NCBI GenBank assembly: GCA_002269645.1
Contig: NIVC01000157.1
Coordinates: 310,001 to 374,000, forward strand
Source: Macrostomum lignano
Taxonomy: Eukaryota
DNA: 64,000 nucleotides
Direction: 5' to 3'
A model generated the notes under the pieces. It made no database searches. It was not told the DNA's origin and saw nothing but the letters and a program-made list of their open reading frames with translations. Position 1 is the first letter of the stretch. Each line of letters begins with the position of its first letter. Position numbers and translations under genes: made by a program. This document shows, one piece after another, positions 21,799 through 61,764 of the stretch.

Positions 21799-22221
21799 TC
21801 AATTCTGCTTTCTTTCACCGCCCATGCAAGGAGGCGAACCAGATACCTCAGCCTCTTTCAGCCACTCGTCGGGTGTTCTGGCATCAATGCTCAGCGCGTG
21901 AATTCCACCTCGGCCGGAACTTGACGAGCCGCCGAGATAACTAGCCAGCACTTTGTTCACCAACCTGTGCCGGTTAACTACTGATACACCATCGAACTGG
22001 TTTGAAACAATCAGCACTTTAAAATGAGTCTCAGCCCTGTGTCTATCGGCAACTGCGTGGCCAGCTGATTCGTTGATAATTTTTAAATGAGTTGGGCGCA
22101 GCTCTGATGAGGATTGGAGGCTGGACTGAATGCGACAGGCAATGGGACCCTGGTAGCCTGCGAATGCATCACTGCAGAGACCACGCCTGGCTGCAGAAAT
22201 GAATAAACTTATTCTAGAAGC
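21799..22221 (-). CDS. BOLA1: BolA-like protein (BOLA1 type), last exon; start exon not located
   Basis: LRPTHLKIINESAGH..ETHFKVLIVSNQFDGVSVVNRHRLVNKVL..GIHALSIDARTPDEW..SPPCMGG is the BolA signature. TTCTTTCAG acceptor at 22222 and no in-frame Met nearby, so an upstream exon is needed. Confidence 0.9.
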   Translation of the reverse strand, partial: ASRISLFISAARRGLCSDAFAGYQGPIACRIQSSLQSSSELRPTHLKIINESAGHAVADRHRAETHFKVLIVSNQFDGVSVVNRHRLVNKVLASYLGGSSSSGRGGIHALSIDARTPDEWLKEAEVSGSPPCMGGERKQN

Positions 22222-37900: not shown

Positions 37901-39080
37901 TTTTGGCGCCTCTGTCTCTTGTTTGGCGCCACTGTCTCTTGTTTGGCGCCTCTGTCTCTTGTTTGGCGCCTCTGTCTCTTGGTGGGCGCCCCTGTCTCTT
38001 GGTGGGCGCCCCTGTCTCTTGGTGGGCGCCCCTGTCTCTTAGCGGGCGCCACTGTCTCTTAGCGGGCGCCCCTGTCTCTTGTTTGGCGTCTCTGTCTCTT
38101 GTTTAGCGCCTCTGTCTCTTAGCGGGCGCCTCAGTCTCTTAGCGGGCGCCCCTGTCTCTTAGCGGGCGCCTCTGTCTCTTAGCGGGCGCCCCTGTCTCTT
38201 AGCGGGCGCCTCTGTCTCTTGTTTGGCGCCTCTGTCTGTTGTTTGGCGTCTCTGTCTCTTGTTTGGCGCCTCTGTCTCTTGTTTGGCGCCTCTGTCTCTT
38301 GTTTGGCGCCTCTGTCTGTTGTTTGGCGCCTCTGTCTCTTGTTTGGCGTCTCTGTCTCTTGTTTGGCGCCTCTGTCTCTTAGCGGGCGCCCCTGTCTCTT
38401 AGCGGGCGCCTCTTTCTCTTAGCGAGCGCCCCTGTCTCTTAGCGGGCGCCTCTGTCTCTTGTTTGGCGCCCCTGTCTCTTAGCGGGCGCCCCTGTCTCTT
38501 GGTGGGCGCCCCTGTCTCTTATGGTGGGCGCCCCTATCTCTTGGTGGGCGCCCCTGTCTCTTGGTGGGCACCCCTGTCTCTTGGTGGGCGCCCCTGTCTC
38601 TTAGCGGGCGCCCCTGTCTCTTGTTTGGCGCCCCTGTCTCTTGGTGGCGCCCCTGTCTCTTGGTGGGCGCCCCTGTCTCTTGGTGGGCGCCCCTGTCTCT
38701 TAGCGGACGCCCCTGTCTTTTGTTTGGCGCCCCTGTCTCTTGGTGGCGCCCCTGTCTCTTAGCGGACGCCCCTGTCTCTTGTTTGGCGCCCCTGTCTCTT
38801 GGTGGGCGCCCCTGTCTCTTAGCGGACGCCCCTGTCTCTTGTTTGGCGCCCCTGTCTCTTGGTGGCGCCCCTGTCTCTTGGTGGGCGCCCCTGTCTCTTG
38901 GTGGGCGCCCCTGTCTCTTAGCGGACGCCCCTGTCTCTTGTTTGGCGCCCCTGTCTCTTGGTGGCGCCCCTGTCTCTTAGCGGACGCCCCTGTCTCTTGT
39001 TTGGCGCCCCTGTCTCTTGGTGGGCGCCCTGGCTCTTGGTGGCGCCCCTGTCTCTTGGTGGCGCCCTGTCTCTTGGTGCT
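34990..39080. repeat. 4.1-kb 20-bp GC-rich minisatellite (GGTGGGCGCCCCTGTCTCTT)n with variant units and higher-order blocks
   Basis: Period 20; variants ggtggg/agcggg/gtttgg; blocks repeated at a 759-bp offset (e.g. 35791 vs 36550). Confidence 0.97.
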
Positions 39081-39469
39081 CCCCTAGAGAAGTAGAGCTC
39101 CGTTATTTGCAAAGCTTGATTGCTTTTTCATTTAGTTTTTGGAGGAACGCATTGTATTTATGGGGCCGATTTAAGGGTGGTAAGACCCCTGTCTGCCGGG
39201 CGGCGACACCTCGTACTGACCCACTGTCATTCGGGAAGATGCATTGTCAGTGTAATCTGACGCCTAGTTCTTTCATATAAGCTCCACAGATGCACAAAAT
39301 TGAACACCGCGGGGATCGTGGCGCTGAGTCAGATTTTTTTACATCTGGATCAGAGAGCTGTGTTGCTTTGGGATCGATTTCACTTCACAATAATGGCTGC
39401 TATTTGAGTCTGCAATATCTAACCTGGCAGCCAAGGCAAAGCAAAAGCAAGCGCGATGAAGTTGTAAGC

Positions 39470-40140
<671 letters not shown>

Positions 40141-40864
40141 GAGACGACACACAAGTAAAGATGTACAGCTTCCTATAATTTTCCATAAGGGATTCTCAGA
40201 CTGTCTATGGATTTCTGTTGGGGGAATTAGGATTCTATAATTTCATGTATGCAAGTACATGTATACAAGTACATGTACAAGTACATGCAATTGTTTTATT
40301 TGTCAGCTTGTCGGTGTCGGGTGAGCGGCTTGATTTATGTGCTTTACATGTGTAGCTATTACATTCGCCGCAAAGACCAGCTCTACCGATCTACGCAACG
40401 GCCCGCTTACTATAGTGCTCTGCTGTAGACTCCCGTACGAAACAGAAGTTCGATCGCACGGTTCCTTTCTGCCTTGCTTAAACGTGTAATGTTAGTTTAT
40501 TATAACAAACTTGAAAAAACTTTTAGAAATTTTGCCACATGCTGCATTCAAAATATTTCAACTGTATATTTTAATACTGCTTATTTCAATGGAATAAAAC
40601 TATACTTAAGTACTACCCGATTCTTCGAAATGAAGCGCTTGCGTGGAAAATTCAACTTGCGCATTGTGTGGAAGTTAAATAATTAAAAAATAGACTAAAA
40701 AACTTATAAAATCCAAAATCCTAAGTAGGTACATCTGACTACCGGCATACTCGGTCGATTTACTATCAGAAACAATTTTCATTTCGAACCAGGCCCCCAT
40801 TATAGGCCTATGTTGTATTCGCAAAATATAGTAATTTAAACAGGTAGTTATCATTTTTCAAAAA

Positions 40865-43800: not shown

Positions 43801-46800
43801 TTTAGCTTGCATCTAATAATAATATTTAATTTGAGATACAATTTTGAATTGAAAGTTAGAAAAATACTAGGATAGGGCTATTTATTAATATATAAAATAG
43901 CATTCCTATTGCAAAAAATACTAAGTAAATTACTGAAATTCCTTAGTCACTAAGTATAGTGTCTAAGTAATAGGATTCTATGATTTTATATCTCCTTATA
44001 AAAGTTTAGAGTGTTAGGCCTACCAATTGATAAAAGTTACATATTAGGCCCTATGTGTTGTAGGGAATCCTTCCTTCTTAATAAGATCCCACCGCTGAGA
44101 CAAAAGCTGTTGCAGGGCTCTGTCTCTCTATAAAAGATTCCCTCTGCTAAGTCACCAAAACTGTCGCAGGGGCAGTGCCCAGGATGGCGCGAATTTGTGC
44201 CAGGCGCGAATTTTGAGTAAAGTGGCGCAAAAATGCGCGAGTTTTTCTGCTGTGGCGCAAATTTTTTCTAAACTGAGTGGCGCAAATTTTTTGCAACTGA
44301 GTGTTCTTTTGACATTGGTTCTCTCGAAGTAGAGGGCTCAACTGCATCAACCGCCAAAATTGATCCACAGCCATGTCGATGGCAAATCTGACAAGTTTCC
44401 GAGCAAGTGGGGGACAAGTGCCCTTAACTTTCCTAATGGAAGTGCAGAAGTTGAGCGCGTCTTTAGTACTTTGAGTGACACGGTCACAAAGAAACGCTCA
44501 GTTTTAAAACCGGAAACAGTCAGGGCATTGGTTGGTGTTTGCCTGCTCAACCAACAGGTTAGAGCAGTTGCCATAGAAAGGCAAGACCATGGTCGGGCAA
44601 GTTTTTAACACATCCTTATCAGAAGCAAAACTCGGTTTGTTCATCATTTTATTAGAGATAAATCTATTGATTTCACTACAAATGATATTCTTGGGAAATT
44701 GATTCATTCTCAGAATTTTGGTGAGATTGTTAACTTCAATGTTGAAATTGGTCCAAGAGCTGCAAACCGTGTAGGCCCTGTGCAACAAACAACGAATCAG
44801 GCCAACTTTCCACTGTCTGGGACACACAGCTCCAAAATTAAGCATCAAGTTCATGAAAGTGGGCTTGCGGTAAACTTTAGTGGAAACCGAATTACTGTGG
44901 ATGTCAACGTCAACATCAAGGAAAGGGAGTTTCTTGTCACCAACTTCAACCGTGAACTGGATGTTTTTGTGAGTGGAGTTCAGAGCAGCAAGAAACTCTT
45001 CATGATCCGATCCCCCTTTGAAAATGGCAAAGGTGTCATCAATGTAACACTTGTAGAATCTAGGAGCACATTGCAGGGTCATCCACTCTTTCTCCAAATG
45101 AGTCATACAAATGTTGGCAAGAGTGGGCGCAAGGGGGCTACCCATCGCGCAGCCATCAGTTTGGCGGTAGTACTTATCATTAAAAAGGAACAGACCAGAG
45201 GTGGCAAAGTTCATAAGTTTTTTTAAAGTACTTTTTGGGAATTTTGGAGGGGCATGCTCATAGACATAGTCAGCGGCCAGATTAATAGCAAACTGCAGAG
45301 GAACATTTGTGAACAGAGAGGTCACATCAAAGCTACAAATGTAGTCATTGTTAGTTGGGGTAACCTCTTTCAGATGGTTCATAAAGTCAGTGGTCGAGTT
45401 GATGGAATGGTCACGTGGGATGGTGGGCTTGATCAGGTGATCAAGAAATTTGGCTAATTGGTACTCAGCAGTATTAATCATGGAAACAATAGGTTTAAGA
45501 GGTTTGTTCGGTTTGTGAATTTTACAGACACCATAAAGTTGACCAGGCTGACTGCTATTTGGCATGATGCGTTTGAAAGTTTCGTCTTCAATGTGTTGTT
45601 TCACATGGTTGCGCAAAAAACTCTGCAGGGATCTCTCAGCTTTCAGAACAGGATGCGCAGTGGAAACTTCAGTTATTGCTCCCAGACAGTGGAATTTGGA
45701 TTGGTCTTGAACAATCTCGTTCATTTTCATGTTGTAATCATTTTCCCGCAACGCTATTGCTAGCAAGAAAAATAGGCTTACTCACAAGACTATGAAAGGC
45801 CTTAGGGAGAACAAAGAGATAAAAATTGTTAGCTATGATAAAGGATATGGCATTGCCATCATGGACACCAATGATTACAACATGAAAATGAACGAGATTG
45901 TTCAAGACCAATCCAAATTCCACTGTCTGGGAGCAATAACTGAAGTAGTCTAATATAAATTAGACTTTATATGACTTCTTTATACTATGGCCTGGGTTGC
46001 ATTTGTTTTTGTGCAAAGGTATCCTATCCTTCAGTTGTATATGACCCATGGTTAAGCAAAGGTATAATTGGCTTTGGCTTAAGCATTTGCAAATAGTTTC
46101 AACCAATCTTCCTAGTTTTACTGGCTTTGTATTTTGTTGTTTACCCTTTTACTAATTGGTTGCAGCTAGCTTTGCCCTTTTAGCTATGTTGTCATGCCAA
46201 TGATTTGCTAGGCCAGGTTGCTGCTATTTTTAGGTCTTCAGAGGATGACTCTGTAATCTGTTTGGCTTACTAGCTATAGAGACAGTGTCTTACTGCAAAG
46301 TATGCATTTATTGCCATACAGGGCACTTGGGTAAAAAAATATCAAGAAGGTCCACTACTTTGCAATGGTCCTGAGTATAAACTATGATTGCCTATCATAC
46401 AACTATTTAAGTAGGAAATTTTGCCAGAAATATCCCATCTTGAGCCAAGATCCATGTGGGGGGGGGAAATGCTAACTAGCAGAGTTACCAATGACTAAAG
46501 GATAGGGTTTTCCTTACACTCCTAACATCTGAATTTTTTACCTGAATTTTTGTGTGAAATTTTTTTACATTTTATATGAATTTTATAACAAAATAAATCA
46601 ATTCCATTTCCCTAATGTTTGCTAAACCATCAATTGAAATTTTATCTAAAAAACAAGTTAAACAAACTTAAAATGTATAAAGATCTGATATTATTGTTGA
46701 TCAGGCTGAATGACACTGTCATTTAACTACATAATTAAGCTACATTCATGCACCAATCTCATTGAAATTCTCAGAGAAAGAAGGCAAAGCATTTCACCTG

Positions 46801-49800
46801 AGCTACCAGGACCGGCTTCAGTTAGCGGCTCACTGCAAGCAGGTGGCCCACGGCCCCTACAAGTCTGATGCTTCGCCTGGCGTCGGGTGGCTGGATGTGG
46901 TTGGCAGCGATAGAAAGTAAACTTGGCTAATTAATTAACTGTTGCTAATTAGACTATGCGAGTTAGGAAAATTATCCCAATAAACAAATTATTCACGCAT
47001 GTCTCTTAACCAGGGCTACCTGGCAGTCGCTCGGAGACCTGAGTCGAGAACGGGCTCAAGAGAAATTCGTGGAAATTCTTGACCGAGCCTGTCCTCTGCT
47101 GGCGCCCTACCTGGAGGCGCATCTCAATGAGAAACGGGATCGGGAGAATAAGATTAAGGAGGAGGCCGAGGCCAAAGAGTGAGCGATTGATGGGTTGTAG
47201 TATGAGATTGACATTGAGATATGGGATTTGCAGATTAGAGTATGCGAGATTTATAGATTGGAGTCTGAGATTGATAGACGAGTGTGAGATTGATAGATTG
47301 GAGTGTGAGATTGATAGATTGGAGTGTGAGATTGATAGATTGGGATGTGAGATTGATAGATTGGGATGTGAGATTGATAGATTTGAGTGCGAGATTGATA
47401 GATTGGAGTGCGAGATTGATAGATTGGGATGTGAGATTGATAGACGAGTGTGAGATTGATAGATTGGAGTGTGAGATTGATAGATTGCAGTGCGAGATTG
47501 ATAGATTGGAGTGCGAGATTGATAGATTGGAGTGCGAGATTGATAGATTGGAGTGTGAGATTGATAGATTGGAGTGCGAGATTGATAGATTGGGATGTGA
47601 GATTGATAGATTGGGATGTGAGATTGATAGATTTGAGTGCGAGATTGATAGATTGGAGTGCGAGATTGATAGATTGGGATGTGAGATTGATAGATTGGAG
47701 TGTGTGATTGATGGATTGGAGTGTGTGATTGATAGATTGGAGTGCGAGATTGTTAGATTGGAGTGTGTGATTGATAGATTGGAGTGTGAGATTGATAGGT
47801 TGGAGTGCGAGATTGTTAGATTGGAGTGTGTGATTGATAGATTGGAGTGTGAGATTGATAGGTTGGAGTGCGAGATTGTTAGATTGGAGTGTGTGATTGA
47901 TAGATTGGAGTGCGAGATTGATAGATTGGAGTGCGAGATTGATAGATTGGAGTGCGAGATTGATAGATTGGAGTGTGAGATTGATAGATTGGAGTGTGAG
48001 ATTAATAGATTGGGATGTGAGATTGATAGATTGGGATGTGAGATTGATAGATTTGAGTGCGAGATTGATAGATTGGAGTGTGAGATTGATAGATTGGAGT
48101 GTGAGATTGATAGATTGGGATGTGAGATTGATAGATTGGAGTGCGAGATTGATAGATTGGAGTGCGAGATTGATAGATTGGAGTGTGAGATTGATAGATT
48201 GGAGTGCGAGATTGATAGATTGGAGTGCGAGATTGATAGATTGGAGTGCGAGATTGATAGACTGTAGTGAGAGATCGATAGGTTGAAGCATGAGATTTAT
48301 CTTTAGAATCATAAAAATAAAAGAAACTGACATGCAACAATGCGCCCTATTTAAAAAATTCTCAGACGCGAAATTCAACGCCAGAAGCAGCAAGAGCAGG
48401 AGCAGATGCAGCAGCAGCAGCGTAAGCAAGCCGAAGCGGCAGCCAAGCAGAACTTGGCCAATCAGAAGACAAACTCAGTGTCTGGTCCTGTAACCAACAG
48501 AGATGACTCGCGGCGTCATCAGCAGGAGTGAGTGACAGCTCCATCTTTTTTTAGCAGCTGAACTAGCAATGCAATTCGCTTATTGAAAAATCTCGTCAAA
48601 GAGTCGCTTTAGAATCACTGAGTTGCGTGAGACTCTTTTACGATTCTGAAAATCGCGCCTCCGTCGCATTTGAGTCGTTATGTTTTCAACGGGTAATATA
48701 ATGTACTGCAGGAATGGTGTGGGCCACCCTGGCGGCAGTACTGCCCATTCTGCAGACTCCTGAGATGTTATTGGCACTGATTGGCCCTAATGGTTTAATA
48801 ATAATTAATAGTTAGTTGATTATACCTGCATTTAATGCTCAGATGTGCAACCGACAGCTCAGCCGCAGCTATTGCTGGGGGGTCGCCACAAACACCCTCA
48901 ATTACCCCAGCTAATGCTGGGACCCATCTTGCTCAAGGTCACAAATTGTTCCTAGTGGTAGTGGGATTCGAACCCCCAACCTTTCAATCATAACTCCGAC
49001 GCTCTAACCACTAGGCAACCTAGGCATGCCTTGCCATACTACTTAGGTGGCGAGGCATTTAGCCTTAAAAATATGGTTAGAGTTGCTCCTTCCGTTTACC
49101 CAAAATTACGTTTCTTTTGCTTAGCTTTCTTTCAAGAGGCATGTATAGTATGACTAGGCTACAGCCCCATGAAGTGCGGCTGGATTCAGCATAGCGCCTC
49201 AGGCACTCATCTCCCCCCCCCGTTCTCACCATCCATATCCGAGCAGAGCTCAGATTCGGGCGGCGCTGAACCAGCAGACGGCTGTCCAATTTCGCCAATA
49301 CGCGGCCGAGCAGCATCCAGACGACGCCTACAAGCAGGCAGAGCTGATCGCTCAGCTGCAGGAGCAGCACTTCCAGCAGTACATGACTCAGGTCTATCAG
49401 CAGCAGTTGAAAATTCAACAAGAAGAAGAGCAAGCAAAACTGTTGCAGCAGCAGCCAAAGCAAAGTCAACAGAATTCTACGAATGAGTCTGCAACTGTTG
49501 AGGCGGCTGCAGCTGAGGGTGAGACGGGATTTAATTTATGGGGATTTGTTGCTTTTGTTTTATTAGGGTTTCGGGACTCTGCAGTATTGGGGTCAGGGAT
49601 CTGGAGCATTGGGGTCAGGGACTCTGGAGTGTTGGGATCAGGGACTCTGGAGTATTGGGATCAGGGATCTGGAGTATTGGGATCAGGGATCTGGAGCATT
49701 GGGATCAGGGATCTGTAGTTTAGTGATCTGGGACTCTGGAGTGTTGGGATCAGGGATCTGGAGTATTGGGATCAGGGATCTGGAGCATTGGGATCAGGGA

Positions 49801-52800
49801 TCTGGAGCATTGGGATCAGGGATCTGTAGTTTAGTGATCTGGGACTCTGGAGTATTGGGATCAGGGATCTGTAGTTTAGTGATCTGGGACTCTGGAGTAT
49901 TGGAATCAGGGATCTGTAGTTTAGTGATCTGGGACTCTGGAGTATTGGGATCAGGGATCTGTAGTTTAGTAATCTGGGACTCTGGAGTATTGGGATCAGG
50001 GATCTGTAGTTTAGTAATCTGGGACTCTGGGGTATTGGGATCAGGGATCTGTAGTTTAGAGATCTGGGACTCTGGAGTGTTGGAATCAGGGATCTGTAGT
50101 TTAGTGATCTGGGACTCTGGAGTGTTGGAATCAGGGATCTGTAGTTTAGTGATCTGGGCACTCTCGAGTGTTGGGATCAGGGATCTGTAGTTTAGTGATT
50201 TGGGACTCTGGAGTATTGGGATCAGGGATCTGTAGTATAGTGATTTAGGACTCTGGAGTGTTGGGATCAGGGATCTGTAGTTTAGTGATCTGGGACTCTG
50301 GAGTGTTGGGATCAGGGATCTGTAGTTTAGTGATCTGGGACTCTGGAGTATTGGGATCAGGGATCTGTAGTTTAGTGATGTGGGACTCTGGAGTGTTGGG
50401 ATCAGGGATCTGTAGTTTAGTGATCTGGGACTCTGGAGTATTGGGATCAGGGATCTGTAGTTTAGTGATCTGGGACTCTGGAGTGTTGGGATCAGGGATC
50501 TGTAGTTTAGTGATCAGGGACTCTGGAGTGTTGGGATCAGGGATCTGTAGTTTAGTGATCTGGGACTTTTGAGTTTTGGGATTCAACATCTATAGTGTTT
50601 AAAAAAAGTTGCATATAAAATATTTTAATTCTGTTTTTTTTAAGTCAATTTTTACTGCTTTTTAAGCCAAGTATTTTGTTTAGCATCGCGACAACTTTTT
50701 ATTATTTTTTTGTAATTTTATTAAATTATTCAGTTTATACTACTGCTACTACTCTCGTACTATTGGTCAGCAGTATTTTGGTATTGCGCATCTGAAAAAT
50801 ATCCAATTTAATTAAGATTTCAATCAGCAGCTGCAGCAACAGCTGCAACAAGATGGAGATGATGAAGCAGAGGCTGGACCAGAAATTCTTCCGGCCAGCA
50901 TGTGGACGAGAAACAATGCGGCCGAATTTAAGAAAGAGATTCTGCGCGACAGCCGGCACTGCTGCATTAAGATTGGGTCGCTGGCTACGGCTACGGTAAT
51001 CCGACTGACTGCCTGCTCTTCTCTAGGCTTAGTCCCGAGTTTAGTCCCGAGTTTAGTCCCGAGTTTAGTCCCGAATTTAGTCCTTAAAATGTAGTATTTC
51101 AATGTTCTTCTTTTGCGAATACATGAGTCCCACTTCTACATTCCCCAGATGTCCGAATCGCAGATCCCTAAATAGTCCCGATTGCTAAGAAGTCCCGATT
51201 ATTGCAGATCCCTAAAAAGTCCCGATCATTGCAGATCCCTAAGGAGTCCCGATCATTGCAGATCCCTAAGAAGTCCCGATCATTGCAGATCCCTAAGAAG
51301 TCCCGATCATTGCAGATCCCTAAGAAGTCCCGATCATTGCAGATCCCTAAGGAGTCCCGATCATTGCAGATCCCTAAGGAGTCCCGATCATTGCAGATCC
51401 CTAAGAAGTCCCGATCATTGCAGATCCCTAAGGAGTCCCGATCATTGCAGATCCCTAAGAAGTCCCGATCATTGCAGATCCCTAAGGAGTCCCGATCATT
51501 GCAGATCCCTAAGGAGTCCCGATCATTGCAGATCCCTAAGAAGTCCCGAATCCCGATCATTGCAGATCCCTAAGAAGTCCCGATCATTGCAGATCCCTAA
51601 ATAGTCCCGATCATTGCAGATCCCTAAAAATCCCGATCGCAGATCCCTCATAAAGTCCCGATTGAAATCCCTTAAACTCGGACCCCAAATAAAGGTTATT
51701 ACTGCTTTTATAAATGATATATCCTGTAGTTTAGCGCCGAAAACAGAGATCGACAACAATGAACCACATTGTCAATTTTGTTATAATCATGCCACATTCC
51801 TGCAGTTGATTATTTATTAAGTAGTAGACTATGTAATATTGCCTAAGTAGGTATATTTTTTCTTAGAAGTGTACTACAGTCTAGTAGAAGTCTCTATTAT
51901 TTCTACTCAGTTAATATATTATTTTCACGTGTCGCTTTCCGAAACGCATGTGTGTTAAATGCGTTTGCTCATAGCGGTGCACATCATGCACTTCATTTTT
52001 GTTGTCAATAATCTTTGCACGCTCTAAACGGATTAGCAATGCTACTTTTTTCCTTTGTGAAAATTCTACGTAATTTTTTAAATTAAATTTGGTTTACTAA
52101 CAGTAGAGTAATTTGGGTGTTCAACTGTTTTTTAGGAAAATTTCTGAAAAATTTGCGCTTAACAAAAATGATAAATTTATTGCAGCTTTGCCTGACAAAC
52201 CGGCCCCGGTTTTGACCAACGGCAACGCGGCGACTTCAAAAGTGTCGCCCGAGCTGCAGCCGCAGTCGCCCAGCGGAGAAGCGGCAACAACAAACAGCCT
52301 GATGACCGCGCCAAGCATGTGGTGCGATAAGCAGCTGACAGCCGCCCAGTTCAAAGCTAAACTGGCCGCTGACAGCGATGCCAGGCTCAAGATTGGCCCT
52401 GGGGAGGTTGTCACTGTAAGGATGCTGGAGACAGTGGAGTAGATGTGTAGATAGGAGAGAGTAGATTGTGGGGTGAAGGAGAGTAGATTGTGGGGTAGAT
52501 TAGTAGATATGAGACTAGATTATAGGGTAGATGAGTAGATAGGAAAGTAGATTGTGGGGTAGAGGAGCAGATGGAAGAGTAGATTGCGGTTAGATAAGTA
52601 GATAGGAGAGTAGACTATAGGGTAGATTAGATAAGAGTAGGTAGGTACTAGAGGTTACATTAGTAGATAGGAAAGTAGATTATAGAGTAGATAAGAGAGT
52701 AGATTATAGAGTAGATAAGTAGCTAGGAGAGTAGATTGTGGAGTATAGGAGTAGATAGGAAAGTAGATTGTGGGTAGAGGAGTAGGTAGGAGAGTACACA

Positions 52801-55657
52801 ATAGGGTAGATTAGATAAGAGTAGGTAGGTACATTTTAGAGTTTAGATAAGTAGATAGGAGAGTAGATTATAGGGTAGATGAGTAGATAGTGGAGTTAGG
52901 ATGGATGAGTAGATGGGACAAGTAGACTAGAGGATAGATTTAGCGAGTTGAGTGGAGTTAAATAAAAGAGGGAGAGGAGATTAGAGCGAGAGAGAGTGTG
53001 TGTATCAATCAGGGAGAGATGAGTTGCTCTGATTTTAAGCAAGCGTTTTTATTATTTTATAACTTTCACAAGTTAATTTTTTAACTTTAAATAGTTTCTT
53101 TAATCTCTTACATTTGATTTAACAAATATTCGATATTTGGTCTTGCAATGATGGCAATTATTTAGCTGGATAATCTGAAAGCTCATTAATTAGACACAGC
53201 CGGTACTTGGTAATACCCTTTAATCCTTTAATTGTTAATATTTATAATTTGTTACACAGACATATTTAATCATGTTGAATTATTGCAAACTGCAGAGAAT
53301 GTGGCAACTCAGTTGACAATGTGTGTTGTGTGTCCCTGTGTTTTGTATCGGTTAAATTCTTAGTTAATACTACTACTCACCAGCTCTTGTAAGTAGTGCA
53401 AACCGGGCATGTCTATGGTTTATTTTTTTCAGGTTCGCGTGCCAACTCACGAGGAGGGCTCGTGCATAGTGTGGGAGTTCGCCACCGACCATTACGACAT
53501 CGGGTTCGGCGTGTACTTCGAGTGGACCGTCTCGCCCTCTGACCGCGTCACCGTGCACATCAGCGAGAGCTCAGATGAGGAGGAGGAAGAGGAGGCCAAC
53601 GAGGATGGCAATAATGAGGCTGGCGAGGCTGAGCATCAAAAGCTTGACGGAGGTGGGTCGGAGTTGGCATCTATGGGTATTTGTTAAAATTATTCGGGTG
53701 ACCTACTTTGCTTTTTGAATGATCCAAGCAAACCGATTTCAATTTGTCCTGTTCGAGTCATGCTTGACCCATCTAAGTCATGCTTGACCCATCTGAGTCC
53801 TGCTTGACCTATCTAAGTCATGCTTGACCCATCTGAGTCCTGCTTGACCCATCTGAGTCCTGCTTGACCCATCTGAGTCCTACTTGACCCATCTGAGTCC
53901 TACTTGACCCATCTGAGTCCTGCTTGACCCATCTGAGTCCTGCTTGACCCATCTGAGTCCTGCTTGACCCATATTTGTCCTGCTTGACCCATCTAAGTCA
54001 TGCTTGACCCATCTGAGTCATGCTTGACCCATCTGAATCCTGCTTGACCCATCTAAGTCATGCTTGACCCATCTGAGTTAGCTTGACCCATCTGAGTCCT
54101 GCTTGACCCATCTGAGTCCTGCTTGACCCATCTGAGTCCTGCTTGACCCATCTGAGTCCTGCTTGACCCATCTGAGTCCTGCTTGACCCATCTGAGTCCT
54201 GCTTGACCCATCTGAGTCCTGCTTGACCCATCTGAGTCCTGCTTGACCCATCTGAGTCCTGCTTGACCCATCTGAGTCCTGCTTGACCCATCTGAGTCCT
54301 GCTTGACCCATCTGAGTCCTGCTTGACCCATCTGAGTCCTGCTTGACCCATCTGAGTCCTGCTTGACCCATCTGAGTCCTGCTTGACCCATCTGAGTCCT
54401 GCTTGACCCATCTGAGTCCTGCTTGACCCATATTTGTCCTGCTTGACCCATCTAAGTCATGCTTGACCCATCTGAGTCATGCTTGACCCATCTGAATCCT
54501 GCTTGACCCATCTAAGTCATGCTTGACCCATCTGAGTTAGCTTGACCCATCTGAGTCCTGCTTGACCCATCTGAGTCCTGCTTGACCCATCTGAGTCCTG
54601 CTTGACCCATCTGAGTCCTGCTTGACCCATCTGAGTCCTGCTTGACCCATATGAGTCCTGCTTGACCCATCTGAGTCCTGCTTGACCCATATGAGTCCTG
54701 CTTGACCCATCTGAGTCCTGCTTGACCCATCTGAGTCCTGCTTGACCCATCTGAGTCCTGCTTGACCCATATGAGTCCTGCTTGACCCATCTGAGTCATG
54801 CTTGACCCATCTGAGTCCTGCTTGACCCATATTAGTCCTGCTTGACCCATCTAAGTCATGCTTGACCCATCTGAGTCATGCTTGACCCATCTGAATCCTT
54901 CTTGACCCATCTGAGTCATGCTTGACCCATCTGAATCCTGCTTGACCCATCTGAGTCATGCTTGACCCATCTGAATCCTGCTTGACCTATCTGAATCCTT
55001 CTTGACCCATCTGAGTTAGCTTGACCCATCTGAGTCCTGCTTGACCCATATTTAGTCCTGCTTGACCCATCTGAGTCATGCTTGACCCATCTGAATCCTG
55101 CTTGACCCATATGAGTCCTGCTTGACCCATATTAGTCCTGCTTGACCCATCTGAATCCTGCTTGACCCATCTGAATCCTGCTTGACCAATCTGAATCCTG
55201 CTTGACCCATATTAGTCCTGCTTGACCCATCTGAGTCCTGCTTGACCCATCTGAATCCTGCTTGACCCATCTGAATCCTGCTTGACCAATCTGAATCCTG
55301 CTTGACCCATATTAGTCCTGCTTGACCCATCTGAGTCCTGCTTGACCCATCTGAATCCTGCTTGACCCATCTGAGTCCTGCTTGACCCATCTGAGTCCTG
55401 CTTGACCCATCTGAGTCCTGCTTGACCCATCTCCAGATTCCAAACCCGCTGATGGAGCGGCATCAAAGCGGCGACGTCCTGACGATGACAAGGCGGTTGA
55501 CGAGATCATCCCGGTGTTCCGGCGCGACTGCCACGAGGAGGTGTACTGCGGCAGCCACCAGTACCCCGGCAGAGGTGTGTACCTGCTGAAATTTGACAAT
55601 TCCTACTCGCTTTGGCGATCCAAGTGGCTGTACTATCGAGTGTACTACACAAAGTAG
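40865..55657 (+). CDS. ACBD3: Golgi acyl-CoA-binding protein ACBD3 (ACB, coiled-coil/Q-rich, GOLD). Exons 40865-40934, 46775-46916, 47014-47178, 48366-48527, 49247-49518, [50817-50995 OR 52186-52415], 53433-53652, 55437-55657
   Basis: [13 protein letters not shown]|[30 protein letters not shown]; [20 protein letters not shown]; SMW..|[31 protein letters not shown]; [35 protein letters not shown]. All junction phases are consistent (1431 nt with exon A, 1482 nt with exon B). The start Met is inferred. Confidence 0.93.
41662..42542. mobile_element. hAT-type MITE (881 bp) in ACBD3 intron 1
   Basis: 15-bp TIR CAGTGTTGGGCACCA / TGGTGCCCAACACTG; perfect 8-bp TSD TTTATATA (41654-41661, 42543-42550). 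Confidence 0.93.
42895..43430 (-). mobile_element. Tc1/mariner (IS630-type) transposase N-terminal fragment
   Basis: [54 protein letters not shown] is a paired HTH with GRPR linker (ATG at 43197). No DDE domain. Possible degenerate TIR near 43405-43430. Confidence 0.75.
43579..43807. repeat. ~230-bp direct repeat, copy A (copy A' at 45956-46185)
   Basis: Near-identical, with about 3 differences by eye; the two copies flank the Penelope/hAT block. Confidence 0.9.
43810..44056. repeat. Diverged copy of 41160-41393
   Basis: Shared blocks such as ttagtcactaagtatagtgtctaagta and gtgttaggcctaccaattgataaa. Confidence 0.8.
44173..44550 (+). mobile_element. Internally deleted hAT fragment (subterminal repeats and C-terminal dimerisation motif)
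   Basis: Starts CAGTGCCCAGG with tggcgcaaa/ggcgcgaa repeats. [34 protein letters not shown] matches the hATC motif. Confidence 0.75.
44540..45946 (-). mobile_element. Penelope-like retroelement RT fragment with inverted 5' segment (45770-45946, + strand)
   Basis: [67 protein letters not shown] are PLE RT motifs. The plus-strand piece encodes [23 protein letters not shown] possible 3' remnant lies at 44070-44160. Confidence 0.9.
47200..48270. repeat. 21-bp minisatellite (GAGATTGATAGATTGGAGTGY)n, ACBD3 intron
   Basis: Period 21, about 50 units. Confidence 0.97.
48841..49020 (-). mobile_element. SINE copy 2 (internally deleted), ACBD3 intron
   Basis: Shares agatgtgcaaccgacagctcagccgcagc, accctcaattaccccagctaatgctgg and the tRNA-like head (GGTTCGAATCCC) with 13542-13810, but lacks most of the CORE segment. 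Confidence 0.8.
49570..50580. repeat. 45-bp minisatellite (ATCAGGGATCTGTAGTTTAGTGATCTGGGACTCTGGAGTRTTGGG)n, ACBD3 intron
   Basis: Period 45; shorter subunits at the 5' side. Confidence 0.95.
51030..51660. repeat. 12-bp (AGTTTAGTCCCG) and 27-bp (AGTCCCGATCATTGCAGATCCCTAAGR) arrays between the two alternative ACBD3 exons
   Basis: Periods 12 and 27 seen directly. Confidence 0.93.
52440..52950. repeat. Degenerate purine-rich AGTAGAT repeat, ACBD3 intron
   Basis: Recurring gagtagat(t/a) units. Confidence 0.75.
53755..55432. repeat. 20-bp minisatellite (TGCTTGACCCATCTGAGTCC)n filling the last ACBD3 intron
   Basis: Period 20, about 83 units; runs directly into the ctccag acceptor at 55436. Confidence 0.97.
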
Positions 55658-56889: not shown

Positions 56890-57690
56890 AGACCGGGGTG
56901 CCCAATAAGAGACAGGGGCGCCCACCAAAAGACAGGGGGCGCCCACCAAGAAACAGGGGCGCCCACCAAGAGACAGAGACGCCCACCAAGAGACAGGGGC
57001 CCCACCAAGAGACAGGGGCCCCACCAAGACGCCCACCAAGAGACAGGGGTGCCCACCAAGAGACAGGGATGCCCACCAAGAGACAGGGGTGCCCACCAAG
57101 AGACAGGGGTGCCCACCAAGAGACAGGGGTGCCCACCAAGAGACAGGGGTGCCCACCAAGAGACAGGGGTGCCCACCAAGAGACAGGGGCGCCCACCAAG
57201 AGACAGGGGTGCCCACCAAGAGACAGGGGTGCCCACCAAGAGACAGGGGTGCCCACCAAGAGACAGGGGTGCCCACCAAGAGACAGGGGAGCCCACCAAG
57301 AGACAGGGGCCCCACCAAGAGACAGGGGCCCCACCAAGACGCCCACCAAGAGACAGGGGTGCCCACCAAGAGACAGGGGCGCCCACCAAGAGACAGGGGT
57401 GCCCACCAAGAGACAGGGGTGCCCACCAAGAGACAGGGGTGCCCACCAAGAGACAGGGGTGCCCACCAAGAGACAGGGGCGCCCACCAAGAGACAGGGGT
57501 GCCCACCAAGAGACAGGGGTGCCCACCAAGAGACAGGGGTGCCCACCAAGAGACAGGGGTGCCCACCAAGAGACAGGGAGCCCCACCAGGACGCCCACCA
57601 AGAGACAGAGGCGGCCACCAGGACGCCTACCAAGAGACAGGGGCGGCCACCAGGACGCCTACCAAGAGACAGGGGCACCCACGAAAAGCA
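56890..57690. repeat. 20-bp minisatellite (CCACCAAGAGACAGGGGTGC)n, the reverse complement of the 35-39 kb array family
   Basis: The unit is the reverse complement of ggtgggc(g/a)cccctgtctctt. Confidence 0.95.
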
Positions 57691-58203
57691 CTGAGCGTGC
57701 AAGTGCATGGCGCATTGTGCAGTCCACGCCAGGCGTATATTTGCAATTTTGTCTACTCTAGCGGTATTTGATCCTTTGAGGTCTGCAATCGTAACGAAGG
57801 GTTTAAGCAACCAGACTCTTAAAACGCGTACTCGTAATTCCACTGCTAAGTACTATTGCTGCTGCGTGGCGAGGGTATAGATTAGCTGGTGTTACAGTGT
57901 AGGTTGTTTTTACTTTGGTTTAAGTTATAAGAGCAACGTGCGCATCGAAAGCTCCTCGGGGTTTGGTCGCCTGTCTTTGGTGCGCTCGCTCTGTCTGGAA
58001 GGACTGTGGCTGTTTTGTCACGCTTGGTTGCTTTCCACTGTTTATTATTCCATTTATTAGCTGTATCATTCTTCTTGCGCCCCTTTATAATGCTGCAATT
58101 AGTTAAAATCTGGCCCGGCTTGGCGCTCCCTGGCTTGTGTGGCAATAAAGTCTGCAGCCACTACATTGCTAGCTCGTACTATCGTGATACGAAAGGCCCA
58201 CGG

Positions 58204-61200
58204 ATGATCAACGATACACCGTCTACTGAGCATCCGGCTGCAGCTTGGGCAGGTGAAAACATTGAACAAATTCTTGACATAATTTACCTGGCTAAGAGCT
58301 CAGCAGACCAGCAAGAGATACCAGCTGATGAATTGCGCAAAATTCAAGAGCGCGAGCTTCGGCCCATGTGGCTCGACCAAACCGATAATCCATTGTCCAA
58401 CATGGCTAGAAATGCAGTTGCTGGGGACAATGCAGACTTGGACCGCACGCTGGCGTACCTGACCGACCAACAGACGAGTCTGTTGCTGCGCCATTGTATC
58501 TTGCTTGGTCACCTGGCTTTGGCGCTTACCCTGCTGACTCGCGTGTCCGATGTCGACTGGAAGATAAGCAGCGACGAAACAGCACTCATGCTGGCTGCCG
58601 GCGCGGGACACCACGAGCTCGTCACGGCACTTCTCCATCGTGGCGCCTCAGTGGAAGCTGAGGACAGCGAGGGTTGGACCGCCCTGTCCAGGGCGTGTCG
58701 TGCCGGCCAGCTCAGAGTCATCAGGCTGCTGCTGGATGGAGGATCCGACGCGGATCACTTGGACCGGCTGGGCCGCTCATGTCTGCAGCTGGCCGAGCAG
58801 TGCGGACACGAGCGACAGGTGCTGCGGCTGCTTTCGAAACGGAGTGCTGAGCAAGATGTTAGCACCGCGTCAGCCACTCCGGATGGCCAATCGATTGGCT
58901 CTCCGGTTGACAAGTAATGCCACATGTACATGTACATGTCCATGAGACGTTTTTCATGAACTCTGAGTGAATGTACGAGTAGGCGCCTTGCTGCTGTAAC
59001 GCACTGAAACGAATTCATTGTCAATTAACGCCATCAAATCTTACATTTCTAGCCAATCGCTTGATGAAGAGCAAAGTCTGGAGTTGCACCAGTGGCTCAA
59101 CAGTGCCGGGTTCACTTCTGAGCGAGCCCAATGTCTGCAGCGATTTGCAGACTTTATTCAACAAATGGCACGTGGAATGCTTCCAGAAAATTGGACAATG
59201 ACAGGCAGTTATGCAGATGGCTGGGCCAACAGTCTGATTCAGGTTAACGGCAGGACGGGGGCAGATTCCGACATTGACTGGACAATCATAATGCCCCAAG
59301 TGTTTCATCTGGCAGGCGGCTGCCACTGCGAGGAACTGCAAGGAAACAAGCGACTTCAAGTAGTTCAAGGTCACGCTCAAGTGGAGGTCGGAACAGGTGA
59401 TCAACCTCTCTCTGATCGTGATGTTGCCCTTTAAATCAGACAAAGGACGTATAAGTTATTTCCGTTTCTTCCCTTCTTTGGCCCGAATTCCTCGGCTGAG
59501 AGCTCGTTTCTTGGCCGAGGCGCAGCCGAGGCCTAGAAGCGAGCTCTCAGCCGGGGACTTTGGGCCATGGACAGAAAGAAACGGAAAGAATATATTTCTT
59601 CCAAACTTAAATGGACCGGGCCAAAGAAATGAAAACAGCATTGAACCATAGACAGGCACGGCCCAGCCAAGTGGGGAAGAAGCCAAGTGGACCGTATCTT
59701 CTTGGCCGTATGCATAAAGCACTGTCTATGGTAATCCAGACTTGAAAAACTATCTTAGTCTGGATTTGGATTTGGTATGCAGAAACACGAAGTTAGACCG
59801 ATCTATGACTATAGGCTTTATACATCCCGCCCAAAAACTGCCTTCCTGCCGTCGCAGTCAGCAGGGCTAGCCATAGACTATGGCCATAAGCAGTGGCGGA
59901 TCTAAAATTTCATTTTGGGGGGTCCAAGTTTGGGGTGCCAACGTGAGTTTGAATTGAAGGGCGCCAATTTTTAAGCATAGGGGGCGCAAAAATGCGTGTA
60001 GGGGGCGAAAAATCAAGTTTAAAGGGCGTAAACTTCTCAAGGTTTTAGGGGGGCGCAATATGTTTATGTTCTGTCAAACTATTTTTTTTGGGGGGGGGTG
60101 GGGGCGGCCGACCAAAATACACCCCTGGCCATAATCCTCTAGTCGGGGACAGCTCGACTGATCACGACCTTTGTACCTCATCAGTGTGCCATCCTATGTA
60201 CTAAAAATGAAAATCTAATATAATAAAAATCATGAACTATATAATTCAGTATCTCCCACTGTATTCAGGAAACCAGCCAGCTGTGGCGGCGGCGGCCTGC
60301 GGAATGAGGCCAGCCCAGGACACCTGCTATGCCTTTGATTGCTGCAGCGGCTACTGTAAACAGGCGCTGATGGATTTGCAGGAAATCACTCGAGAAGACA
60401 GGGACTGTGTCCACCTTGTTAAAGCGACAAGACCGAACGCATCTAACGAGCTCAGAGTGAGCTTCAGCTTTGAAGAAAAGAAAATTCTACGTAAGATGAA
60501 CTCCGTTCAGGGCCAGCTGTTTACTCTGTTAAAGTTCACGTTCAAGCGGTACCTGCCGGGGAATCTGGACACACCTGGACTCAAGACCTACAATGCGAAG
60601 ACAATCATGTTCTTCATGCTGAAGCGGCACCACAGAGAAGAGGAAGCTGAGTGGCAGCCGAAGAATCTCATCAAGCTGCTCAAAGAATCGCTCGACATGA
60701 TGCTGAGCTTCATCGAATCGAACAGCTCACCTGACGAGTGCATGCCTCACTTTTTCATGCCCGACGCGCCGCTCTACTTCAAGAATGCTGGACTTGGCGG
60801 CGACTTAGACAACACTAAGTCAATGGTTCGAGACCGATTGAGGCAGGTGAGAAGCAGCACCGAGGACTTGTTTCAAGCTCTCCAGAAACTCATGCAACCA
60901 CTGCAGTCGAAGAGCTTTTATTTCCATCCATTCACTCTGCTCCCGTTGACTCAACCTTCAATTAAAAGAAAGATACACATCAGTGGTGGCTATCCACACT
61001 ATGCGGATGTGTACGGTGTTATATGCTACTGTGTTAAGAAATTGCATTCGAAGAGTTGCGACAAGGAGGACCTCTTGAGCCAACTCAAACTGCTCGAGAG
61101 CCTGCCTTGGTGCAAGTCCGCTGTTATCTGCCTGACTGCCATGGCCCACCTGAAATTCAAGGATATTACTTGTGCTGTCCAACTGATGAAGGAGCTCATT

Positions 61201-61764
61201 AGTCACAAAGTAATGAACGGACTCAAAATCGAGCACTGTGGACGGAGAAGCAATTGCACAAAGTTTTTTCTTCGCTGCCAGTCTCACGGCTTGGACTGGG
61301 CGTGGAGGTTCTGCTTACCATGGACTGCAGTGCCCGAGTTCCCTTTCCTGCCTGAGTTCACGAGTTCCCTGCTCACCGCCAGGATAGAGCACCCTCGCTC
61401 GTCTCACCTGTACCTGAACTTCCGCTGCCTGAGCTGGAGTCTGCAAGCTGAGCTGCTGGACAGGGGGTTGACTGACACTGCCTCGTGGATGCCAGAGCTG
61501 CAGGACGACCCGGACTTGGAGGAGCTGCTCACTCTGGCTCACTACAGCGACAGTAGAGAGCAGGTGGAGTTCAGTCTACGCCAAATGGAAATGGTCCGAG
61601 ACGAAAGACGCGTTGCCATGGAGAAGCAGGACTATGAGAAGATTGAAACGGTCAAAAATAAGTTAAAAAGCTTGACTGGCGACGAGAAGAATTCACCTGC
61701 TTGGAGCGCGACAAGCCAGAACAGCTCACAAGCTAGACCTGTGCGCTGTTGCTTTTGCTGTTGA
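58204..61764 (+). CDS. Ankyrin-repeat + Mab-21/cGAS-like nucleotidyltransferase (cGLR-like), ~849 aa, exons 58204-58913, 59053-59396, 60269-61764
   Basis: ANK repeats: ETALMLAAGAGHHELVTALL, GWTALSRACRAGQLRVIRLLL. NTase motif TGSYADG..DSDIDW with candidate third Asp in QDTCYAFDC. Mab-21 C-lobe: LRVSFSFEEKKIL..LLKF..LKTYNAKTIMFF..W..MPHFFMPDAPLY. Phase-2 junction (58914/59052) and phase-1 junction (59397/60268) both join in frame. AATAAA at ~61767. Confidence 0.85.
59891..60127. mobile_element. hAT-type MITE in intron 2 of the ANK-Mab21 gene
   Basis: Ends CAGTGGCGGATCT / ATACACCCCTG; flanks GCCATAAG and GCCATAAT (7/8 TSD match). Confidence 0.75.

What the first reader, a model, noticed from the sequence alone, without database searches (positions are those of the whole stretch)
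50817..52415. Duplicated, frame-enforced mutually exclusive exons at the start of the ACBD3 GOLD domain
Seen: two exons encode the same homologous segment. Exon A (50817-50995): ..[35 protein letters not shown]|. Exon B (52186-52415): ..[36 protein letters not shown]|. Both enter in phase 1 and exit in phase 0 before VRVPTHEEG (179 and 230 nt, both 2 mod 3). Including both, or skipping both, shifts the frame, so a full-length protein needs exactly one. Established: the ACBD3 GOLD domain and adjacent region mediate Golgi targeting and partner binding (giantin/golgins, picornavirus 3A proteins). Inference: two quite diverged, both-open exons imply maintained isoforms with different interaction surfaces. 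I know of no description of such splicing for ACBD3.
Basis: partly seen in the sequence, partly recalled or inferred. Interest (0 to 1): 0.7.

Follow-up and report, generated by a model that had tools for sequence, protein, structure and literature searches.

The report
Ancient either-or exon pair in ACBD3
The Golgi adaptor gene ACBD3 (GCP60) in this window, probably from a free-living flatworm, has two alternative versions of the exon that starts its GOLD domain; the same pair, in the same order, occurs in snails and other invertebrates, so it is an old, conserved splicing switch rather than an artefact.

Summary
Exon A (50817-50995, 179 nt) and exon B (52186-52415, 230 nt) both have AG/GT sites. 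Both enter in phase 1 and leave in phase 0. Both encode the first ~40 residues of the ACBD3 GOLD domain. Using both, or neither, gives an early stop.

It is not a chimera. The same A, then B, then 'VRVPTHE' exon order occurs in seven other genomic loci, including the snails Candidula unifasciata and Pomacea canaliculata. Pomacea RefSeq lists isoforms X1/X3 (A-type) and X2 (B-type), identical elsewhere.

Lineages differ in what they kept:
- Termite, vertebrate and some unnamed short-intron loci have only B.
- The fluke Paragonimus and two unnamed loci have only A.
- Every annotated flatworm protein found, including Macrostomum lignano (72% identical to the window), is A-type.

On human ACBD3 the swapped segment ends at T404. 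It covers helix 1, the hairpin carrying membrane-binding R399, and the start of edge strand V402-P408.

No RNA evidence exists for this species, and its exon B is the most diverged B seen. I found no paper describing this splicing; only automatic RefSeq isoforms record it.

The parts
46768..46920 (+). ACBD3 exon encoding the core of the acyl-CoA-binding domain ([50 protein letters not shown]); boundaries approximate
   Evidence: tblastn with Pomacea GCP60 X1 (63% over 54 aa, E 8e-24) and other ACBD3 proteins
47012..47179 (+). ACBD3 exon, end of the ACB domain and start of the charged region; boundaries approximate
   Evidence: tblastn; open frame
49245..49518 (+). 3' part of the glutamine-rich (Q domain) exon. 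It ends at 49518 in phase 1, donor GTGAGA. This is the exon that must join to A or to B.
   Evidence: 69% identity to Pomacea GCP60 over 59 aa
49573..50582 (.). 45-nt minisatellite (22.5 copies) in the intron upstream of exon A
   Evidence: Tandem Repeats Finder. As RNA it is complementary to the 27-nt array downstream of exon A.
50817..50995 (+). Exon A, 179 nt, the A-type alternative exon (..[35 protein letters not shown]|). The 5' end is the most upstream in-frame acceptor and is not verified by RNA.
   Evidence: A-type profile scores 62.9 bits against 36.5 for the B-type profile. 72% identical, within the whole GOLD region, to Macrostomum lignano A0A1I8IFM0.
51185..51662 (.). 27-nt minisatellite (17.6 copies) in the intron between exons A and B; an inverted, shortened relative of the 45-nt unit
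52186..52415 (+). Exon B, 230 nt, the B-type (canonical) alternative exon (..[36 protein letters not shown]|)
   Evidence: B-type profile scores 36.2 bits against 12.7 for the A-type profile. GC 0.60 against 0.32 in flanking intron.
53433..53652 (+). Constitutive GOLD exon ([31 protein letters not shown]... and the acidic loop); starts in phase 0, ends in phase 1
55437..55657 (+). Last coding exon of the GOLD domain (..[50 protein letters not shown]), stop TAG at 55655-55657

Best explanation
Exons A and B are the two members of an ancient tandem exon duplication in ACBD3/GCP60 that is spliced in an either-or fashion.

Shown: each exon alone joins the Q-domain exon (phase 1) to the VRVPTHE exon (phase 0) and gives a complete GOLD domain. 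Both together, or neither, gives a frameshift and an early stop.

Inferred: such transcripts are non-productive, probably removed by nonsense-mediated decay. Nothing else in the window enforces exclusivity. The A-B intron is 1190 nt, so there is no steric block. All donors are ordinary GT types, so there is no U2/U12 incompatibility.

The choice swaps the first ~40 residues of the GOLD domain: a short strand, helix 1, strand 1, and the hairpin plus first half of the edge strand. In human numbering this runs up to T404. It includes the position of membrane-binding residue R399 and the start of strand V402-P408, which accepts partner beta-strands. B-type keeps the canonical G-x-G-E-(V/T)-V-T hairpin. 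A-type replaces it with G-S-L-A-T-A-T, preceded in flatworms by Cys-Cys.

Inferred: the two isoforms differ in how the GOLD domain sits on the membrane and/or which partners dock on its edge strand. In this lineage (flatworms) A is probably the major form and B a minor or conditional one.
For: - Anatomy and frames in the window.
- Both exons map to the start of the solved human GOLD domain.
- AlphaFold2 gives the same strand-helix-strand-strand order for both isoforms, with block-mean pLDDT of 71-93 (A) and 75-93 (B) over the first 40 residues.
- The same A, B, constitutive-exon order, with phase-0 GTRAGT donors right after the ..T codon and phase-1 acceptors, occurs in L005 and L044 (A 137 nt, B 125 nt), Candidula unifasciata L043 (A unannotated in the intron, B 116 nt annotated), L017/L024/L040 (B 122 nt) and Pomacea canaliculata L046 (A 131 nt, B 122 nt).
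- Pomacea RefSeq isoforms X1 (XP_025105051) and X3 carry the A-type segment. X2 (XP_025105052) carries the B-type segment. X1 and X2 are otherwise identical.
- A-type is spliced to the normal upstream Q region and downstream GOLD exons in P0010, P0001 and P0002.
- Nei-Gojobori dN/dS among L017/L024/L040 is 0.04-0.09 for A (10-18 synonymous differences) and 0 for B (7-10 synonymous differences).
- A-types resemble each other across taxa more than they resemble the B exon: mean identity A-A 0.59, B-B 0.57, A-B 0.43. Profile scores classify the window's exons as A and B by 26 and 23 bits.
- Both window exons have exon-like GC and GC3 with sharp boundaries at the predicted splice sites.
- The structural role of R399 and strand V402-P408 comes from PMC6695192.
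Against: - There is no transcript or protein from this species, so use of each exon here is inferred.
- The window's exon B is the most diverged B seen (0.39 mean identity to other B exons, against about 0.6 among them).
- Every annotated flatworm ACBD3 I found is A-type: Macrostomum, Paragonimus, Rodentolepis, Hymenolepis, Schistocephalus, Cichlidogyrus, Protopolystoma.
- Paragonimus westermani has no recognisable B exon between A and the next exon.
- No B-like isoform from a close relative appeared in the search with the B isoform.
- Exon A's chosen acceptor is weak.
- The RefSeq isoforms of Pomacea are automatic models, and I could not inspect their RNA support.
- The functional difference between the isoforms is untested anywhere.
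Confidence: 0.72

Rival explanations
1. Exon A is the only exon used in this lineage. Exon B is a relic of the ancestral pair that has recently stopped being spliced, or is used so rarely that it is drifting, and is on its way to the loss already seen in parasitic flatworms.
For: All annotated flatworm proteins are A-type. Paragonimus westermani lacks B. The window's B is the most diverged B. No B-like isoform from a close relative was found.
Against: B has an intact 76-codon frame (chance 0.026), while the other two frames hold 4 stops each. It has a good acceptor and donor, GC 0.60 and GC3 0.70 like the constitutive exons, and flanking intron at GC 0.32. It still scores as B-type by 23 bits, although the A/B split predates the flatworm-mollusc divergence. 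A neutral segment would not stay recognisable that long, so any loss of use must be recent.
Confidence: 0.2
2. The two exons are an assembly artefact: two haplotypes or two paralogous genes collapsed into one locus.
For: None beyond the general possibility in a repeat-rich genome (25 tandem-array rows in the window).
Against: The same A-then-B arrangement is seen in seven independent genomic loci from other organisms. The two exons are only 41% identical over 29 aa, far too diverged for haplotypes. Only this one exon is doubled, not its neighbours.
Confidence: 0.02
3. The choice between A and B is steered by RNA pairing. The 45-nt array upstream of exon A and the 27-nt array downstream of it pair in the pre-mRNA, loop out exon A and favour exon B. 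This would add to, not replace, the frame rule.
For: The two arrays are inverted relatives. RNAduplex gives -73 kcal/mol per 90-nt sample, against -40.5 +/- 8.2 for unit-shuffled controls (0 of 300 reach it) and -12 to -56 for other pairs of intronic arrays in this gene. In L005, long inverted repeats also flank exon A (141 nt at 89%) and exon B (215 nt at 79%).
Against: Minisatellites are everywhere in this window and evolve fast. No such pairing is seen in L024 or Candidula. The L005 repeats are probably transposon copies, among 107 inverted pairs in 15.5 kb. No conserved docking or selector sequences were found.
Confidence: 0.12

Closest known systems
Pomacea canaliculata 'Golgi resident protein GCP60-like' RefSeq isoforms X1/X3 versus X2 (XP_025105051, XP_025105053, XP_025105052)
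   Same: Same gene family and same position (start of the GOLD domain). Same exon order A then B, same intron phases, both exons 2 mod 3 (131 and 122 nt). A-type (..ENVISVPSLGTAT) and B-type (..[10 protein letters not shown]) alternatives are otherwise identical proteins.
   Different: A different phylum (mollusc against a probable flatworm). The models are automatic annotation and, as far as I could find, were never discussed in a paper. The window's exons are longer (179 and 230 nt) because they carry more of the linker, and its B exon is much more diverged.
Classical clusters of tandemly duplicated mutually exclusive exons (tropomyosin, FGFR2 IIIb/IIIc, insect Dscam1, 14-3-3 zeta, Mhc); recalled from general knowledge, not tested here
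   Same: Adjacent homologous exons of similar size and identical phases, of which exactly one is needed for an intact protein, swapping a defined structural element.
   Different: No steric block (the A-B intron is 1190 nt), no U2/U12 incompatibility and no conserved docking/selector pairing were found. Here only the reading frame visibly enforces exclusivity.
Human ACBD3 GOLD domain (PDB 5LZ1, 5LZ3, 5TDQ, 6HLN and others) and the vertebrate paralogue TMED8
   Same: Both window isoforms align along the whole crystallised GOLD domain (E about 1e-67 to 1e-70). B-type keeps the canonical G-x-G-E-V-V-T hairpin.
   Different: The vertebrate loci examined have only the B-type segment, fused to the next exon with no intron at T404|V405 and no A-type exon (L012, L018, L036). 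An A-type GOLD domain has no solved structure.

Membership tests
ACBD3 / GCP60 (ACB domain + Q region + GOLD domain) | C-terminal GOLD domain of the ACBD3 type (Pfam GOLD_2) | tested here: met
   Both isoforms match the human ACBD3 GOLD chains at E 4e-67 and 9e-71 over the whole domain. All homologues found carry PF13897.
ACBD3 / GCP60 (ACB domain + Q region + GOLD domain) | N-terminal acyl-CoA-binding domain and glutamine-rich region upstream in the same gene | tested here: met
   Exons at 46768-46920, 47012-47179 and 49245-49518 match the ACB and Q regions of Pomacea GCP60 and other ACBD3 proteins. The first exon with the start codon was not found.
Tandem mutually exclusive exon pair | Two adjacent exons that are homologous to each other | tested here: met
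   41% identity over 29 aa, E 0.002. Both align to the same residues of human ACBD3.
Tandem mutually exclusive exon pair | Same entry and exit phase; each alone keeps the frame, both or neither break it | tested here: met
   179 and 230 nt, both 2 mod 3, with stops on double inclusion or double skipping. The same phases hold in Pomacea, Candidula, L005 and L024.
Tandem mutually exclusive exon pair | Mature transcripts of one species contain exactly one of the two | not testable with these tools
   No RNA data exist for this species. Indirect evidence: Pomacea RefSeq isoforms X1/X3 (A) and X2 (B), and A-type spliced transcripts from other organisms.
Tandem mutually exclusive exon pair | Both exons conserved under purifying selection | tested here: met
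   dN/dS is 0.04-0.09 (A) and 0 (B) among L017/L024/L040. The pair is present in seven other loci. This was tested in other lineages, not in close relatives of the window.
Mutually exclusive splicing by competing RNA pairing (docking/selector type) | Conserved intronic sequences able to pair so that only one exon is exposed | tested here: inconclusive
   Complementary minisatellite arrays flank exon A in the window, but nothing comparable is conserved in L024 or Candidula.
Mutually exclusive splicing by steric hindrance or U2/U12 incompatibility | Intron between the two exons too short to splice, or one U12-type and one U2-type site | tested here: not met
   The A-B intron is 1190 nt. The donors GTGAGA, GTAATC and GTAAGG are all ordinary. 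In one other genome (P0233) the A-B intron is only about 67 nt.

The most novel reading that the evidence does not exclude
ACBD3 carries an ancient splicing switch, at least as old as the common ancestor of flatworms and molluscs and possibly older. The switch exchanges the membrane-facing hairpin and the partner-docking edge strand of the GOLD domain, giving two adaptors with different membrane or partner specificity from one gene. The major animal lineages then fixed one form or the other: B in vertebrates, termites and several unnamed short-intron genomes; A in parasitic flatworms. If so, 'ACBD3' in model organisms represents only half of the ancestral repertoire. In this genome, the inverted minisatellite arrays around exon A may in addition tune the choice.
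Probability: 0.4. Interest if true: 0.7.

Novelty: new member of a known kind. Interest (0 to 1): 0.55.

Why it matters
ACBD3 is a central Golgi scaffold. It recruits PI4KB, binds golgins and other partners through its GOLD domain, and is the host factor that picornavirus 3A proteins dock on. All structural and cell-biological work has used the vertebrate protein, which has only the B-type segment.

A conserved alternative version of exactly the hairpin and edge strand used for membrane contact and beta-strand docking would be a natural experiment on what that surface does. It would also explain why some animal groups, parasitic flatworms among them, have a GOLD domain with a different start.

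For genome annotation the point is practical. In Candidula the A exon sits unannotated in an intron. Gene models in many invertebrates are likely to miss one isoform.

Tried and rejected
1. Finding the species. Three searches of the 5.8-billion-protein set gave no near-identical protein. A 510-aa window ORF is not on record. Rfam found nothing in the window. The closest named relative is the Macrostomum lignano protein at 72% identity, and its own locus is not on record. I could therefore not test exon B in a close relative.

2. Same-species A and B transcripts among the environmental hits. None of the A-type transcripts (P0001, P0002, P0003, P0007, P0010) had a B-type partner with matching flanks among the listed hits.

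3. A degenerate DNA scan of JGI metagenomes for the [14 protein letters not shown] exon returned 35 mostly host-genome contigs. My first regular expression missed A-type exons in three of them; tblastn found them.

4. Names for ten more unnamed A-type exon ORFs. None carries a name, so the phyla of L005, L017, L024, L040, L006 and L001 remain unknown. From memory, the sample that gave P0010 may be a coral metatranscriptome. I could not check this and do not rely on it.

5. The first coding exon of the gene was not found by tblastn or by a motif scan. For that reason I did not attempt an exact full-length look-up of the two isoforms.

6. Conserved RNA pairing as the exclusivity mechanism. It is not supported outside the window.

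7. Literature. No paper combines ACBD3 with mutually exclusive exons. The 'GCP60 + mutually exclusive' hits concern binding partners, not splicing.
Full report
**What is in the window**

The + strand between about 46.7 and 55.7 kb carries an ACBD3/GCP60 gene. Its exons match the acyl-CoA-binding domain (46768-46920, 47012-47179), the glutamine-rich region (up to 49518) and the GOLD domain (53433-53652 and 55437-55657, stop at 55655-55657). I did not find the first coding exon. The introns are AT-rich and packed with minisatellites.

**Checking the observation**

- The Q-region exon ends at 49518 in phase 1 (donor GTGAGA).
- Exon A is 50817-50995, 179 nt, ending ...[12 protein letters not shown] before GTAATC.
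- Exon B is 52186-52415, 230 nt, with acceptor TTATTGCAG, ending ...KIGPGEVVT before GTAAGG.
- The next exon starts at 53433 in phase 0 with VRVPTHEEG.

Both alternative exons are 2 mod 3. With both included, B is read as LCLTNRPRF-stop. With both skipped, the next exon is read out of frame to a stop after 35 codons.

The two peptides align with each other: 41% over 29 aa, E 0.002. Each, joined to the downstream exons, aligns from its first residues to the crystallised human ACBD3 GOLD domain (E 4e-67 and 9e-71).

Both have exon-like composition. GC is 0.52 and 0.60 against 0.25-0.32 in neighbouring unique intron, and GC3 is 0.56 and 0.70 against 0.60-0.75 in constitutive exons.

The only soft point is the 5' end of exon A. 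The AG at 50815-50816 has a weak pyrimidine tract and other in-frame AGs exist further in. Any usable acceptor must still give 2 mod 3.

**Not an artefact: the pair is conserved**

Searching with the A isoform turned up spliced proteins from other organisms that end the segment with the same unusual motif (..[12 protein letters not shown]|VRVPT or ..[12 protein letters not shown]|VRVPT). These are P0001, P0002, P0003, P0007 and P0010. In contrast, 144 of the 173 proteins listed by those two searches have the canonical G-x-G-E-x-V-T form.

A profile of the A-type segment then found dozens of exon-sized ORFs on genomic contigs. They end ..GSLATAT followed by V-S, which is the translated GTnAGT donor. 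One is in Schistosoma curassoni.

Fetching the DNA around such exons showed the same layout as in the window: upstream exon, A-type exon, B-type exon, VRVPTHE exon. It occurs in seven loci.
- L005 and L044, two ENA assemblies: A 137 nt, B 125 nt.
- L043, the land snail Candidula unifasciata. Here the annotated protein uses B (116 nt) and the A-type exon lies unannotated in the intron.
- L017, L024 and L040, three related GenBank metagenome contigs: B 122 nt, with A 380-870 nt upstream.
- L046, chromosome CM009765.1 of the apple snail Pomacea canaliculata: A 38959-39089 (131 nt), B 40153-40274 (122 nt).

Every exon ends in phase 0 before GTRAGT. Every exon whose acceptor is clear is 2 mod 3.

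**Both forms are used**

Pomacea RefSeq lists three isoforms of 'Golgi resident protein GCP60-like'. X1 (482 aa) and X3 carry the A-type segment ASLPPMPKIVPASLWTRKDLKEFKNGLRKSKENVISVPSLGTAT. X2 (479 aa) carries the B-type segment [41 protein letters not shown]. X1 and X2 are identical everywhere else. These are automatic models, and I could not inspect their read support.

Independent of annotation, the three related genomes L017, L024 and L040 differ at 10-18 synonymous sites but only 4-6 non-synonymous sites in exon A (dN/dS 0.04-0.09). In exon B they differ at 7-10 synonymous and no non-synonymous sites. Both exons are therefore translated and constrained there.

**Age and fate of the pair**

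A-type segments from different organisms resemble each other more than they resemble B segments. Mean identity is 0.59 for A-A, 0.57 for B-B and 0.43 for A-B. Without the last seven signature residues it is still 0.51 against 0.43.

Profiles built from the two classes, without the window, score the window's exon A at 62.9 (A) against 36.5 (B) bits. They score its exon B at 36.2 (B) against 12.7 (A) bits. The duplication therefore predates the split of the lineages that carry it, which include a mollusc and a probable flatworm.

Lineages then kept different things.
- Termite contigs cover the whole intron between the Q exon and exon B and hold no A exon (L013).
- Vertebrate contigs have B fused to the next exon (L012, L018, L036).
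- Some small-intron genomes have B only (L009, L014, L019).
- L006 has A only, with a 660-nt intron and no B.
- L001 has A fused to the rest of the GOLD domain.
- The fluke Paragonimus westermani has A at 19236-19358 and the next exon at 21289, with no B between them.

**Whose genome is this?**

The 'Cys-Cys' variant of the A-type (..[EH][12 protein letters not shown]) is the flatworm form. It occurs in annotated proteins of Macrostomum lignano, Paragonimus species, Rodentolepis nana, Hymenolepis weldensis, Schistocephalus solidus, Cichlidogyrus casuarinus and Protopolystoma xenopodis.

The Macrostomum protein (UniRef A0A1I8IFM0) is 72% identical to the window's A isoform over 187 residues, and much higher in the folded parts. 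I infer that the window comes from a free-living flatworm related to Macrostomum but not from M. lignano itself. This is an inference, not a determination.

**What the switch changes**

Aligned to human ACBD3, the alternative segment ends at T404, with the exon boundary at T404|V405.

According to PMC6695192, R399 together with L514, W515 and R516 forms the membrane-binding site of the GOLD domain. The same paper reports that strand V402-P408 is the edge strand onto which picornavirus 3A proteins add a beta-strand.

The A/B choice therefore swaps a short first strand (around the invariant W375), helix 1 (with invariant F383 and K384), strand 1, the G398-R399-G400-E401 hairpin and the first three residues of the docking strand. 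B-type keeps G-x-G-E-(V/T)-V-T. A-type has G-S-L-A-T-A-T.

AlphaFold2 predicts the same order of elements for both window isoforms: strand, helix, strand, strand. Block-mean pLDDT over the first 40 residues is 71-93 for A and 75-93 for B. Whole-model means are 62 and 78, and the alignment used was mostly B-type.

That the two forms differ in membrane contact or partner choice follows from position only. Nobody has tested it.

**How exclusivity is kept**

In the window the A-B intron is 1190 nt and all splice sites are ordinary GT-AG. Steric hindrance and U2/U12 incompatibility are therefore out. The reading frame is the only visible rule. Removal of the wrong products by nonsense-mediated decay is inferred.

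One further feature may matter. The 45-nt array upstream of exon A (49573-50582) and the 27-nt array downstream of it (51185-51662) are inverted relatives. As RNA they are predicted to pair far better than controls: -73 kcal/mol per 90 nt, against -40.5 +/- 8.2 for shuffled units (0 of 300 reach it) and -12 to -56 for other array pairs of this gene. Pairing would loop out exon A. Nothing comparable is conserved in L024 or Candidula, so I treat this as a lead only.

**Limits**

There is no RNA evidence for this species. Its exon B is the most diverged B-type exon I saw (0.39 mean identity to the others). All annotated flatworm proteins use A, and at least one parasitic flatworm has lost B.

The main rival is therefore that B is a recently idled relic here; I give that about 0.2. 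Against it, B has an intact 76-codon frame, good splice sites and exon-like GC3. It also keeps a clear B-type signature despite a duplication older than the flatworm-mollusc split, which requires selection over nearly all of that time.

**Novelty**

Mutually exclusive exons are a well-known kind of splicing. This pair in ACBD3 is present in RefSeq models of one snail. I found no paper that mentions it, and ACBD3 structural and cell-biological work I know of uses the vertebrate protein, which has only the B-type segment. I rate it a new member of a known kind, of moderate interest. It is real, old and sits on the functional surface of a much-studied Golgi adaptor, but its functional meaning is untested.

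Noticed in passing
window 49573-50582 and 51185-51662: The minisatellite arrays on either side of exon A (45-nt and 27-nt units) are inverted relatives of each other. As RNA they are predicted to pair strongly (-73 kcal/mol per 90 nt; shuffled units -40.5 +/- 8.2). This could loop out exon A or favour back-splicing.
   Followed up: partly
window 35003-39078 and 56890-57578: A 20-nt minisatellite (TCTTGGTGGGCGCCCCTGTC, 204 copies) lies upstream of the ACBD3 gene. An array of essentially its reverse complement (35 copies) lies just downstream, so the gene sits between inverted arrays of one family.
   Followed up: no
window, whole: The window is unusually rich in minisatellites: Tandem Repeats Finder gives 25 rows (some overlapping) scoring 200 or more, with periods of 15-184 nt, plus a (GACA)n tract of 159 copies at 39470-40103. 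Most lie in introns or between genes.
   Followed up: no
window 3672-4208, 9364-10116, 12778-13437, 17926-18387(-), 21799-22236(-), 58006-58917, 60232-61764: Neighbouring genes by Pfam: ASF1 histone chaperone exon, a 2OG-Fe(II) oxygenase (AlkB-like) single-exon ORF, a Gpi1/PIG-Q exon, an hSac2-domain exon, a BolA-like ORF, an ankyrin-repeat ORF and a 510-aa ORF with a weak Mab-21 C-terminal domain match.
   Followed up: partly
window 26412-27692(-) and 44504-45766(-): Retroelement remains: an endonuclease/reverse-transcriptase-type ORF and a reverse-transcriptase ORF. The latter lies just upstream of the first recognisable ACBD3 exon, so it may sit in the first intron.
   Followed up: no
L043 (Candidula unifasciata CAJHNH020008580.1) about 12077-12207: An intact A-type exon (..[13 protein letters not shown], donor GTGAGG) lies unannotated in the intron of the annotated GOLD-domain gene model. 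The ACBD3 gene there is also split into two models.
   Followed up: yes
P0233 (ENA contig of 753 kb): A single ORF reads through an A-type exon, about 67 nt of intron and a B-type exon. In that genome the two exons are so close that steric hindrance could contribute to exclusivity.
   Followed up: no
They are probably transposon copies, among 107 inverted pairs in 15.5 kb.
   Followed up: no
P0011 (Phthorimaea operculella annotated protein): The annotated moth protein repeats the segment [37 protein letters not shown] three times in a row. This looks like an assembly or annotation artefact, or a local tandem duplication.
   Followed up: no
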